Shown here: one piece after another, positions 49,701-51,776 of the stretch
Numbering within the stretch: position 1 is the first letter of the stretch
How the letters are laid out: every line of letters starts with the position of its first letter
Assembly: GCF_036321535.1 (NCBI RefSeq)
Contig: NC_087462.1
Span: forward strand, 868,001-932,000
DNA: 64,000 bases
Source: Camelus dromedarius
Lineage: Eukaryota
Reading direction: 5' to 3'
Made by a program: the position numbers and the translations under genes
Notes under the pieces: generated by a model
What the model was told of the DNA's origin: nothing
Databases searched by the model: none
Seen by the model: only the letters and a program-made list of their open reading frames with translations

Positions 49701-50970
49701 ACCCCGCATATGCTTCGTGAGTGCCCGCTGGCGCTTGGCGGGGGGAGCATGGGGGGTGGCCAGGGCCCCAGGCAGCTCCTGACCCTGCCGCANNNNNNNN
49801 NNNNNNNNNNNNNNNNNNNNNNNNNNNNNNNNNNNNNNNNNNNNNNNNNNNNNNNNNNNNNNNNNNNNNNNNNNNNNNNNNNNNNNNNNNNNNNNNNNNN
49901 NNNNNNNNNNNNNNNNNNNNNNNNNNNNNNNNNNNNNNNNNNNNNNNNNNNNNNNNNNNNNNNNCGCTCCTCCACACAGGCCCCAGAGCTTGCAGGAGGC
50001 GACCAGGGGACCAGGGTTCTAAGTGGGCCCCACCCTACTGCCCCCAGAGTGTAATGGGGAGACTCAGCCCCTTCCCTGGGGAGACAGGCTCTGCCAGGCA
50101 GGGGGTCTGATGGGTCCATCCAAGGGGTGTCTGATGGAGGAGACCAGGCCCATCACATGGGTATCTGACGGGGGCGGTCCAGGTCCACCCCAACCCGGTG
50201 TCTGATGGAGGAGGCTCAACCCCTGCCCCCAGGGGCACAGAGCAGGCCGAGTGTGACTCCTGCCGGTTCCCGCAGTGCGCCTTCCTGTTGTTCTGCATGG
50301 CTCCCAGCCCCTGGAACGGGGCTCACAGGCTGTATCATCGCATCATACGTCCACTGTTTCTAAAGCACCACGAGGCCGTGGACAGCATCGTGAGCGACCT
50401 CAGCGGGCGGGCCCTGGACGTGGCGGCCGGAATAACTCGGGACGGTGTGTGCTCCCAGGGCAAGGGGTGTCTGTCTGTCCAGTCTCTGTATGTCTGTCTG
50501 GCCTCTGGCTCCCCGGCCCCCATCACCTTGACTCCTCCTAACTCTAACTGGCCTCCACCTGGCATCTCGGCCGCCTCCGTCGGGCACTCCCCACCCCCTC
50601 ACTGTCTGCCTCTCTCTCCTACGCTCTCGGGAACCAGTCCTGCAGACCCTGGCCCGCAGCCGGGCCCTCGTCACCCCGGCGGCTGTGGCCGTGAGCCCCT
50701 CACCACTCTCAGAGCCGACTGTACGTAAGACCCACCCCCAGGACGTAGGGCACGCACGTGTGTGCCCGTGTGCGTGAGCGTGAGTGTGCGTGCCTGCACC
50801 TGACTCTCTCCCCGCCAGGGGGGCCCCACACTGGCCCCCAGCAGCCTCCATCCCACTCTCTGCAGCTGAGCACAGCCCTTGGGCCCCTGGGCACAGCCAG
50901 ACCTACCTCACCCCCGGGCCCTCTCTCTGCAGCCCAAGCAAGCGTGACTCGACTTCAGAAAGTCAAGTGA
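46771..50970 (+). CDS. REEP6: Receptor expression-enhancing protein 6 (canonical short form ~184 aa, ~213 aa with the optional exon). Exons: 46771-46885, 49623-49716, exon 3 inside gap 49793-49964, 50276-50444, optional 50638-50724, 50933-50970
   Basis: [38 protein letters not shown]; [32 protein letters not shown]; [32 protein letters not shown]; optional exon [14 protein letters not shown]; terminal [12 protein letters not shown]. Visible junctions are GT-AG. Lengths assume a 139-nt hidden exon 3. Confidence 0.92.
48808..48821 (+). promoter_or_regulatory. CTCF core motif CCAGCAGAGGGCAC in REEP6 intron 1
   Basis: Fits CCRSYAGRKGGCRS at all positions. Confidence 0.55.
49793..49964. other. 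Assembly gap (172 N) covering REEP6 exon 3
   Basis: The gap begins at the acceptor (gaccctgccgca|N), and the phases of exons 2 and 4 require an intervening exon of length 3n+1. Confidence 0.9.
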
Positions 50971-51761
50971 AGTCCCTGTCCAGCCCCGGCAAAGACCTGC
51001 CAGCCGGTAAGCTGGAGGACACATCGCACCCCAAGTCTTCTGTGGCTTCCTCTGAGTCCCCAGCAGAGTCTTCCACCAGCCCCTTGTCCCCGAGCAAGGC
51101 AGCCGCCAGGACCTCTGCCAGCCTGAGCCAGTCCCAGCCTCACTCCCCAGCCACTGGCTCTGTCAGTGGCTCCCACCTGCCTGGCAAGGTCCAGGGTGGG
51201 CTTCGGTCTCGAGCCAACTTCTCTGGCCAGCCCCAGGCCCCTGGCCAGCCCCGGGCCTCCGGCCAGACTCAGACCCCCGGCCAGACTCAGACCCCCGGCC
51301 AGCCCCGGGCCTCCGGCCAGACTCAGACCCCCGGCCAGCCCTGGGCCTCTGGCCAGACTCAGACCCGTGGCCAGCAGCGCACCCAACTGTCCACCACTTC
51401 CTCAGGCCCTTCCCAGATGGCCCACAGGTCCTCAGGCTCCAGGCAGCATCCCAGCACCTCCTTCAGCCAGGGGGTCCCCCTCGTGCAGTTTCCCAGTGGC
51501 ACCACCATCCCCACACAGCCCCCCAACGAGACCCCCAATGGGCCAGGGGACTCAGTCCCCAAGGCCTCCAAGCCAAGCAGGCAGCCCCTAGCACTGCCCA
51601 CCAGCAGCACCTCAGTGCCCGAGCTGCCTGCCTCCTGCCAATCTGAGTCCTCCCTGGAGTACTCCTCCGAGTCCACCATGGAGGCCAGCTGCAGCTGGAA
51701 CCACAGACCTGGGCTCCACTACCTGCAGCACTGCTGGCGGCTGAAACACCTGGCCTGCTAG
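50866..51761 (+). CDS. REEP6: Candidate REEP6 long-isoform terminal exon (~298 aa, Ser/Pro/Gln/Thr-rich) reached through an alternative acceptor at 50865/50866
   Basis: Acceptor ccatcccactctctgcag|CTGAG matches the phase-1 donor of exon 4 and enters the 325-aa ORF (50784-51761). The stop lies 10 nt before the AGTAAA poly(A) signal. Confidence 0.6.
51225..51374 (+). repeat. 18-nt tandem repeat, 8 units plus a partial unit (GGCCAG + CCCCGGGCCTCC or ACTCAGACCCCC), encoding GQxxxx hexapeptides
   Basis: Units start at 51225, 51243, 51261, 51279, 51297, 51315, 51333 and 51351. Confidence 0.95.
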
Positions 51762-51770
51762 GGAGGACTC

Positions 51771-51776
51771 AGTAAA
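51771..51776 (+). terminator. Probable REEP6 poly(A) signal (variant AGTAAA)
   Basis: AGTAAA 10 nt after the long-ORF stop; I saw no AATAAA in the 3' exon. Confidence 0.55.

What the first reader, a model, noticed from the sequence alone, without database searches (positions are those of the whole stretch)
50866..51776. Hidden long REEP6 isoform: the whole nominal 3'UTR is an open frame reachable by an alternative acceptor
Seen: an acceptor at 50865/50866 with a good pyrimidine tract is in phase with exon 4 (and the optional exon). It enters a frame that overlaps the canonical stop in a different phase and runs 896 nt to a TAG only 10 nt before the AGTAAA signal. The product would be ~470 aa (~499 aa with the optional exon) instead of ~184/213 aa. 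It adds a disordered Ser/Pro/Gln/Thr-rich tail with GQ hexapeptide repeats and a Cys/His/Trp-rich end (SLEYSSESTMEASCSWNHRPGLHYLQHCWRLKHLAC). An ORF filling the UTR to the poly(A) signal, with repeat units in multiples of 3, suggests coding constraint. From memory a similar ...LKHLAC* ending precedes the human poly(A) signal and long predicted REEP6 isoforms exist in some mammals; I cannot verify this or whether it has been studied. Inference: a tissue-specific ER-shaping REEP with a large cytosolic scaffold tail.
Basis: partly seen in the sequence, partly recalled or inferred. Interest (0 to 1): 0.8.

Follow-up and report, generated by a model that had tools for sequence, protein, structure and literature searches.

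The report
REEP6 second reading frame, already described
The open frame filling the camel REEP6 3'UTR is real and under protein-level selection. It is the back half of a second protein read in another frame across the whole REEP6 mRNA, already described in mouse in 2013, not a long REEP6 isoform made by a new splice site.

Summary
In this camel REEP6 locus one frame is open from 50784 to the TAG at 51759-61, 9 nt before AGTAAA.

- The tail does look coding. It has no stops in 10 of 10 mammals, against 1-7 in the other frames. All 13 sister-pair indels are multiples of 3, against 6 of 42 in flanking DNA. Omega is 0.47 overall and 0.20 in the last 50 codons, against 1.1 and 2.2 in the shifted frames.
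- No new acceptor is needed to reach it. The same frame continues through the canonical acceptor (exon start 50933) into the -1 frame of exons 4, 2 and 1, up to a conserved upstream ATG at 46557.
- In six species the normally spliced mRNA holds an unbroken 475-545-codon overlapping ORF.
- REEP6 wobble positions never carry the T that would stop that frame: 0 of 25 sites against 41 of 115 control sites.

Neme and Tautz (2013) described this 'Reep6 overprint' in mouse. RefSeq models carry it as 'REEP6 isoform X1' across placentals. Translation remains unproven. Exon 3 is masked here, so the camel ORF cannot be read end to end.

The parts
46557..46559 (+). Upstream ATG that opens the second (-1) frame. 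G at -3, C at +4. No other ATG before the REEP6 ATG.
   Evidence: Same ATG and context in whale, deer, bear, alpaca, raccoon dog, unk8 and bison. The annotated CDS of four RefSeq/GenBank models starts exactly here.
46557..46885 (+). Exon 1 from the upstream ATG to the donor (GT at 46886). Read in the -1 frame; 214-nt leader plus the start of the REEP6 CDS.
   Evidence: Leader length is 1 mod 3 in all species (202-238 nt).
46771..46773 (+). Canonical REEP6 start codon (GCCATGG).
49623..49716 (+). Exon 2. Exons 1+2 give 141 uninterrupted codons in the -1 frame (Arg 19%, pI 11.8).
49793..49964 (.). Run of N where exon 3 should lie. Neither frame can be read here and nothing was filled in.
50276..50444 (+). 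Exon 4. Open in both the canonical and the -1 frame.
50638..50724 (+). Optional cassette exon (87 nt; the retina-type exon). The -1 frame also stays open if it is included.
50864..50865 (+).
   Evidence: Not conserved outside camelids and unk1.
50931..50932 (+). AG of the canonical last-exon acceptor (exon starts at 50933). A conserved branch-point-like ACCTCAC lies upstream.
50968..50970 (+). Canonical REEP6 stop codon (TGA).
50934..51758 (+). Tail of the second-frame ORF: 275 codons, rich in Ser, Pro, Gln and Thr, predicted disordered.
51225..51375 (+). Tandem repeat of 18/36/54-nt units encoding the Gly-Gln-rich repeats. Copy number differs from alpaca by 54 + 18 nt.
51624..51758 (+). Conserved C-terminal module (last 45 codons): acidic Ser-rich stretch, then the Trp/His/Cys motif. 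Residues 259-273 (51708-51752) are a predicted helix.
   Evidence: omega 0.20.
51759..51761 (+). Stop codon of the second-frame ORF (TAG; TAA in deer). Same position in all ten species.
51771..51776 (+). Poly(A) signal AGTAAA (AATAAA in bear, raccoon dog, Tupaia, unk1 and unk8).

Best explanation
The open frame in the nominal REEP6 3'UTR is the C-terminal half of a second protein-coding frame that overlaps the whole REEP6 mRNA (an 'overprinted' ORF).

Shown by sequence:
- The frame starts at an upstream ATG in exon 1 (46557), 214 nt before the REEP6 ATG.
- It runs in the -1 frame through the normally spliced exons, enters the last exon through the canonical acceptor (exon start 50933), passes the REEP6 stop, and ends at the TAG 9 nt before the poly(A) signal.
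- If exon 3 has the 139 nt seen in the other species, the camel product would be about 519 residues. Exon 3 is masked here, so this is not verifiable.
- The product has a very basic, Arg-rich N-terminal half, a disordered Ser/Pro/Gln/Thr-rich tail and a short conserved C-terminal helix. It has no REEP (TB2/DP1) domain.

Inferred:
- Ribosomes scanning from upstream transcription starts initiate partly at the moderate-context upstream ATG, giving the second protein. The rest leak through to the strong REEP6 ATG; no other ATG lies between the two.
- Transcripts that start downstream of 46557 would make REEP6 only, so promoter choice would set the ratio.
- What the second protein does is unknown. 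Its composition suggests a nuclear or RNA-associated disordered protein that binds a partner through its C-terminal helix. This is a guess.
For: Homology: the tail matches predicted 'REEP6 isoform X1/X2' proteins, most with no PF03134 domain. Their N-terminal halves are the -1-frame reading of exons 1-4.

Frame geometry:
- The distance from the canonical acceptor to the stop is 1 mod 3 in all nine species tested.
- Spliced models of six species give unbroken ORFs of 475-545 codons from the upstream ATG, alongside an intact 184-codon REEP6.

Tail:
- No stops in 10 of 10 species, against 1-7 in the other frames.
- All 13 sister-pair indels are multiples of 3, against 6 of 42 in the intron and downstream DNA.
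- Codon model: omega 0.47 (p = 3e-17), 0.20 in the last 50 codons and 0.59 in the rest. Shifted frames give 2.2 and 1.1 (pairwise values).

Overlap with REEP6:
- No -1-frame stops, against 3.6-5.2 expected from synonymous shuffles; P(0) = 0.001-0.01 per species.
- A wobble T that would create a -1 stop occurs at 0 of 25 sites in any of six species, against 41 of 115 safe sites (p = 6e-5). Those sites vary at 3 of 25 against 46 of 115.
- REEP6 dS is about half the tail dS.

Leader: the upstream ATG and its context are identical in eight species, there is no intervening ATG, and all leader indels are multiples of 3.

Literature and range:
- Neme and Tautz 2013 (PMC3616865) describe the same arrangement in mouse Reep6.
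- Hits span all four placental superorders, and every named hit is placental.
Against: - There is no RNA, Ribo-seq or peptide evidence here for camel or any other species.
- The upstream ATG sits in an almost invariant block with CCAAT- and GC-box-like motifs. That block could be promoter lying upstream of the main transcription start, which would leave the ATG out of most mRNAs.
- The species were found through predicted proteins or ORF calls that require an intact frame, so lineages with a broken frame would have been missed.
- Under a conservative shuffle that also keeps codon-junction dinucleotides, the absence of -1 stops is not significant per species (P = 0.06-0.5).
- In the overlap the -1 frame itself shows omega above 1. 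This is expected under REEP6 constraint but is uninformative about the second protein.
- The tail alignment was protein-guided in the tested frame.
- In this window exon 3 is masked, so continuity of the frame cannot be shown for the camel itself.
- With the cassette exon included, the -1 frame is broken in bear and raccoon dog.
Confidence: 0.78

Rival explanations
1. First reader's model. An alternative acceptor at 50866 joins the canonical REEP6 frame (exon 4 or the cassette exon) to the tail, giving a ~470/499-residue REEP6 with a TB2/DP1 domain and a long cytosolic tail.
For: The AG at 50864-65 has 16 of 20 pyrimidines upstream and is in phase in camel and alpaca. One ab initio Camelus ferus model (P0004) uses this acceptor. 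Some predicted proteins in other species fuse the REEP domain to the tail through other junctions (P0002, P0014, P0025, P0051-P0055).
Against: The homologous AG is absent in whale, deer, bear and raccoon dog, and is out of phase (68 nt) in unk1, where the canonical frame then meets a stop. This model does not explain why the -1 frame of exons 1-4 and the upstream ATG are kept open and conserved. Long-read RNA data from human retinal organoids describe only two coding isoforms, differing by the cassette exon.
Confidence: 0.08
2. The tail is translated, but mainly as lineage-specific REEP6 fusions made by various frame-shifting splice events, for example an internal acceptor in exon 4 or a shortened cassette exon. 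It would not be translated from the upstream ATG.
For: Alpaca isoform X3 (P0002) switches from the REEP6 frame to the -1 frame inside exon 4. With the homologous donor, the cassette exon of bear and raccoon dog is 67 nt, which would carry the canonical frame into the tail frame.
Against: These events differ between species, whereas the tail is conserved across placentals. In carnivores a GTACGT donor 4 nt upstream gives an in-frame 63-nt exon instead. Stop avoidance in the -1 frame covers exons 1-3 as well, which such fusions would not need.
Confidence: 0.1
3. The region is an ordinary non-coding 3'UTR. The open frame is a by-product of GC- and C-rich composition, and the long 'isoforms' are artefacts of annotation pipelines that pick the longest ORF.
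For: In the window alone, P(no stop) is only 0.03. GC content is 67%. Annotation pipelines do favour long ORFs. Amino-acid identity across orders is only about 45-65%.
Against: Indels preserve the frame (13 of 13). Omega is far below 1 only in this frame. The stop position is identical in ten species. There are no stops in 10 of 10 species despite dS of 0.3-0.8.
Confidence: 0.03

Closest known systems
Mouse 'Reep6 overprint' (Neme and Tautz 2013, BMC Genomics 14:117, PMC3616865; Ensembl proteins ENSMUSP00000100994 new, ENSMUSP00000100995 old)
   Same: An extra start codon in exon 1 opens a second frame that overlaps the ancestral REEP6 frame. The camel locus has the same upstream ATG, the same frame relation and a homologous product.
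   Different: The paper dates the second frame to Boreoeutheria. Here predicted homologues also appear in Afrotheria (elephant, dugong, elephant shrew) and Xenarthra (tamandua). The paper gives no selection tests on the 3' tail. No mouse sequence was examined here.
RefSeq/Gnomon 'receptor expression-enhancing protein 6 isoform X1/X2' models (alpaca, red deer, black bear, blue whale, Myotis, voles, marmots, elephant, tamandua and others)
   Same: 85-90% identity to the camel tail in alpaca and 44-66% in other orders, with the same C-terminal motif. The CDS runs from the upstream ATG to the tail stop.
   Different: These are computational models named after the host gene. Several use odd internal junctions. 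None is an experimentally shown protein.
Other mammalian dual-coding mRNAs with long overlapping frames: POLG/POLGARF, GNAS XLalphas/ALEX, CDKN2A p16/ARF (from general knowledge, not tested here)
   Same: A long second frame overlaps a conserved CDS. The product is basic, Arg-rich and largely disordered. In POLGARF and ALEX the overlapping ORF starts upstream of, or near, the main start codon.
   Different: No sequence relationship. POLGARF starts at a CUG and ARF uses a separate first exon. Here an AUG in the shared first exon is the candidate start, and more than half of the ORF lies beyond the host stop codon in the nominal 3'UTR.
REEP6.1 / REEP6.2 (cassette-exon isoforms of REEP6, retina versus other tissues)
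   Same: Same gene. The cassette exon is present at 50638-50724. These are the two isoforms reported in long-read data.
   Different: Both end at the canonical stop 50968-70. Neither includes the tail.

Membership tests
Long REEP6 isoform (TB2/DP1/HVA22 family, PF03134) carrying the tail | The tail is joined in frame to the TB2/DP1 domain by a splice junction that is used and conserved. | tested here: not met
   The proposed AG is not conserved, and is out of phase where it is conserved outside camelids. Most tail-bearing predicted proteins lack PF03134. Actual use in camel cannot be tested without RNA.
Reep6 overprint (overlapping second frame of REEP6) | A start codon in exon 1, upstream of and out of frame with the REEP6 ATG. 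| tested here: met
   ATG 46557 is in the -1 frame relative to ATG 46771. It is conserved with its context in eight species, with no intervening ATG.
Reep6 overprint (overlapping second frame of REEP6) | The second frame is uninterrupted across all normally spliced exons, to a stop beyond the REEP6 stop. | tested here: inconclusive
   In the window it is open in exons 1, 2, 4 and the last exon, with consistent phases, but exon 3 is masked. It is fully met in whale, deer, bear, alpaca, raccoon dog and unk8.
Reep6 overprint (overlapping second frame of REEP6) | The product is homologous to the second-frame proteins of other mammals. | tested here: met
   E-values from 1e-141 to 1e-30 against alpaca, whale, deer, bear, bat and primate models. 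The profile search finds 59 and 58 proteins, and all named ones are placental.
Functional dual-coding region | Purifying selection in the new frame where it does not overlap the old one. | tested here: met
   Omega is 0.47 for the tail and 0.20 for the C-terminus, against 1.1 and 2.2 in the shifted frames. Indels are 13 of 13 in threes.
Functional dual-coding region | Constraint on synonymous sites of the old frame that keeps the new frame open. | tested here: met
   Stop-creating wobble T occurs at 0 of 25 sites against 41 of 115 (p = 6e-5). Variability at those sites is reduced, and REEP6 dS is about half the tail dS. A conservative null is weaker.
Functional dual-coding region | The second frame is translated in vivo. 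| not testable with these tools
   No Ribo-seq or proteomics is available here. No paper in the searched library reports any.

The most novel reading that the evidence does not exclude
REEP6 is a true two-protein gene in all placentals. Besides the ER protein, its mRNA would make a never-studied protein of about 500 residues: Arg-rich, disordered, with a conserved C-terminal helix. It would have arisen at the base of Placentalia, earlier than the published Boreoeutherian date. Every exonic REEP6 indel, knockout allele or 'silent' variant would also hit this second protein, so part of the REEP6 retinal phenotype could belong to it.
Probability: 0.45. Interest if true: 0.7.

Novelty: already known. 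Interest (0 to 1): 0.4.

Why it matters
REEP6 is a retinitis pigmentosa gene in people, and mouse knockouts are used to study it. If the overlapping frame is translated, variant interpretation and knockout design for REEP6 need to consider two proteins. Synonymous REEP6 changes could then truncate the second protein, and frameshifts hit both.

The case is also one of the longer conserved overlapping ORFs in a mammalian mRNA, with more than half of it lying in what is annotated as 3'UTR. For genome annotation, it shows that many 'REEP6 isoform X1' entries are not REEP proteins at all.

- explicit selection tests on the tail and on the overlap;
- a wider range, with predicted homologues in Afrotheria and Xenarthra.

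Tried and rejected
- Pfam scan of the tail and of three full second-frame proteins: no family at E up to 1.
- ESM Atlas look-alikes of the tail: only low-scoring (0.63 or less) Pro/Ser-rich disordered vertebrate proteins, no relative.
- AlphaFold2 on the tail with 18 sequences: mean pLDDT 51 and no fold beyond one C-terminal helix, so no fold search was run.
- Logan and ENA short contigs (P0007, P0008, P0011, P0013, P0056, P0061) were fetched or read in the hope that they were transcripts showing the junction. They are genomic, with intron read-through, so they give no splice evidence.
- A zinc-binding reading of the Cys/His end was dropped, because those Cys positions swap with Tyr in several lineages.
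- Reading the carnivore cassette exon as a conserved route from the REEP6 frame into the tail was set aside, because a better donor 4 nt upstream restores the frame.
- Literature searches for REEP6 with dual-coding, altORF, overprint or Ribo-seq terms found only Neme and Tautz 2013.
- Two look-ups of the scan's earlier findings gave nothing on REEP6.
- The masked exon 3 was not filled, and human sequence was not consulted.
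Full report
**What is in the window.** The region is the REEP6 locus of a camel. Protein segments are 98-100% identical to a Camelus ferus model and about 98% identical at DNA level to alpaca.

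The exon map below comes from the sequence and from alignments to other species:

| Feature | Window coordinates |
|---|---|
| Canonical ATG | 46771 |
| Exon 1 end | 46885 |
| Exon 2 | 49623-49716 |
| Exon 3 | hidden under a run of N, 49793-49964 |
| Exon 4 | 50276-50444 |
| Optional 87-nt cassette exon | 50638-50724 |
| Canonical last exon start | 50933 |
| Canonical stop (TGA) | 50968-70 |

**Check of the observation.** The frame of 50868 is open from 50784 to the TAG at 51759-61. The other two frames have 4 and 6 stops. AGTAAA is at 51771-76, 9 nt after the TAG.

The AG at 50864-65 has a good pyrimidine tract and would be in phase with exon 4 and with the cassette exon. The Gly-Gln repeats are an 18/36/54-nt tandem array at 51225-51375.

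Within this one sequence the open frame is only mildly surprising: P = 0.03 by dinucleotide shuffling.

**Where the frame really comes from.** A protein search with the tail found predicted 'REEP6 isoform X1' proteins in alpaca, blue whale, deer, bear, bats, dog, a capuchin monkey and others.

Reading those proteins showed that most have no TB2/DP1 domain. Their N-terminal halves are the -1-frame translation of REEP6 exons 1-4, beginning at an ATG in the 5' leader.

In the window that ATG is at 46557, with G at -3, 214 nt before the REEP6 ATG and with no ATG between them.
- The -1 frame gives 141 uninterrupted codons over exons 1+2.
- It is open across exon 4.
- It passes through the canonical acceptor (CG + C at 50933) directly into the tail frame.

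No alternative acceptor is needed. Exon 3 is masked, so continuity cannot be shown for the camel itself.

**Comparative test with DNA.** I fetched the orthologous loci of blue whale, red deer, black bear, alpaca, raccoon dog, bison, Tupaia and two unidentified mammals from Logan assemblies, here called unk1 and unk8.
- The distance from the canonical acceptor to the stop is 1 mod 3 in all nine species where it can be measured. The stop codon is at the same aligned position in all ten.
- The tail frame has no stop in 10 of 10 species; the other frames have 1-7.
- Between sister pairs, all 13 tail indels are multiples of 3. In the adjacent intron and downstream DNA only 6 of 42 are.
- A codon model (GY94+F3X4, 10 taxa, 191 gap-free codons) gives the values below. 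Pairwise Nei-Gojobori values agree.

| Region or frame tested | Omega | p against omega = 1 |
|---|---|---|
| Whole tail | 0.47 | 3e-17 |
| Last 50 codons | 0.20 | 2e-13 |
| Rest of the tail | 0.59 | 2e-7 |
| Same columns, frame +1 | 2.2 | 6e-19 (omega above 1) |
| Same columns, frame +2 | 1.1 | 0.3 |

**The overlap with REEP6.** Spliced models with canonical junctions in six species each contain two things: an intact 184-codon REEP6, and an unbroken 475-545-codon ORF from the upstream ATG to the tail stop. Leaders are 202-238 nt, always 1 mod 3.
- Synonymous-codon shuffles of REEP6 predict 3.6-5.2 stops in the -1 frame. None is observed (P = 0.001-0.01 per species).
- A stricter shuffle that also fixes junction dinucleotides is not significant per species (P = 0.06-0.5).
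- The sharper test uses wobble positions where a T would create a -1 stop. T occurs at 0 of 25 such sites in any of six species, against 41 of 115 other wobble sites (p = 6e-5). Those sites are also less variable, 3 of 25 against 46 of 115.
- REEP6 dS (0.13-0.35) is about half the dS of the tail for the same species pairs.

**The proposed acceptor.** The homologous AG is present in camel, alpaca and unk1. In unk1 it lies 68 nt upstream, so it is out of phase and the canonical frame then meets a stop.

Whale and unk8 have a different nearby AG that happens to be in phase. Deer, bear and raccoon dog have no candidate with a good tract.

The canonical acceptor and a branch-point-like ACCTCAC upstream of it are conserved wherever the sequence can be read; bison is N there and Tupaia diverges. 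Human long-read data from retinal organoids describe only the two cassette-exon isoforms.

**What is known.** Neme and Tautz (2013) list mouse Reep6 among 'overprinted' genes. [quoted passage not shown] They date it to Boreoeutheria. No other paper in the searched library deals with it.

Profile searches found 59 proteins in the 5.8-billion-sequence set and 58 representatives among 1.84 billion proteins. All named hits come from placentals. They include:
- elephant, dugong and elephant shrew (Afrotheria);
- tamandua (Xenarthra);
- rodents, primates, shrews, moles, pangolins, bats, carnivores and ungulates.

This suggests an origin at or before the placental ancestor. Because the evidence rests on gene models, the absence from marsupials is only indicative.

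**The product.**
- No Pfam family matches and there is no convincing Atlas relative.
- The N-terminal part is extremely basic: Arg 19-20%, pI about 12.
- The tail is rich in Ser, Pro, Gln and Thr and is predicted disordered (mean pLDDT 51).
- The exception is a helix at residues 259-273 with pLDDT 81-88, covering the conserved end.
- The Cys residues of that end swap with Tyr in several lineages, so a conserved metal site is unlikely.

**Mechanism, and what is inferred.**
- Shown: the frame geometry, its conservation and the selection signatures.
- Inferred: initiation at the upstream ATG with leaky scanning to the REEP6 ATG, or control of the ratio by choice of transcription start.
- Caveat: the upstream ATG lies in an almost invariant block with CCAAT- and GC-box-like motifs. 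That block may be promoter, so the ATG may be absent from many transcripts.
- Caveat: the species set was gathered through intact predicted ORFs, which biases it against broken lineages.

**Verdict.** The inference of coding constraint is right. The splice-site mechanism and the 'long REEP6' product are not supported. The feature is the camel copy of an overlapping ORF that has already been described and is widely annotated, though its translation and function remain untested.

Noticed in passing
window 50638-50724; L004 7063-7129; L007 6911-6977; L005 10985-11060: The cassette (retina-type) exon is 87 nt in camel, alpaca, whale, deer, bison and unk8. With the homologous donor it is only 67 nt in bear and raccoon dog and 76 nt in Tupaia. 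That length would carry the REEP6 frame into the tail frame. A GTACGT donor 4 nt upstream gives in-frame 63 and 72 nt instead. RNA data are needed to tell which donor is used.
   Followed up: partly
window 46400-46630: CCAAT boxes lie near 46413 and 46474, with an inverted one near 46612, plus GC-box-like motifs. The block around the upstream ATG is nearly invariant across eight mammals. It could be core promoter as well as, or instead of, coding sequence.
   Followed up: partly
window 46630-46700 and the aligned leaders of L002, L007 and L008: An 18-nt unit (GGAGACCAGCCCGGGGGC-like) varies in copy number in the 5' leader. Whale and unk8 have one more copy than camel, and raccoon dog has one fewer. 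All leader indels seen are multiples of 3.
   Followed up: partly
window 46422-46556: The -1 frame stays open upstream of the 46557 ATG, back to a stop near 46419, with another in-frame ATG at 46431. An elephant model (P0036) also extends upstream through this region.
   Followed up: no
window 51225-51375 vs L006: The 18/36/54-nt Gly-Gln repeat array is longer in alpaca than in camel (by 54 + 18 nt) and is largely absent in other orders. It is a camelid expansion inside the second-frame tail.
   Followed up: partly
window 51771-51776 and aligned loci: The poly(A) signal is AGTAAA in camel, alpaca, whale, deer and bison, but AATAAA in bear, raccoon dog, Tupaia, unk1 and unk8. In every case the second-frame stop lies about 9-10 nt before it, leaving almost no 3'UTR for that ORF.
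   Followed up: no
L002-L009, minus strand upstream of REEP6: In all fetched loci a proprotein-convertase gene (Peptidase_S8 and P_proprotein domains, PCSK4-like) lies head to head upstream of REEP6. This confirms conserved synteny.
   Followed up: no
proteins P0022 and P0030: The dog and snow leopard second-frame proteins are named 'serine/arginine repetitive matrix protein 1(-like)' in public records. An elephant shrew hit is named 'TPRXL-like'. These look like composition-driven misnomers for this ORF.
   Followed up: no
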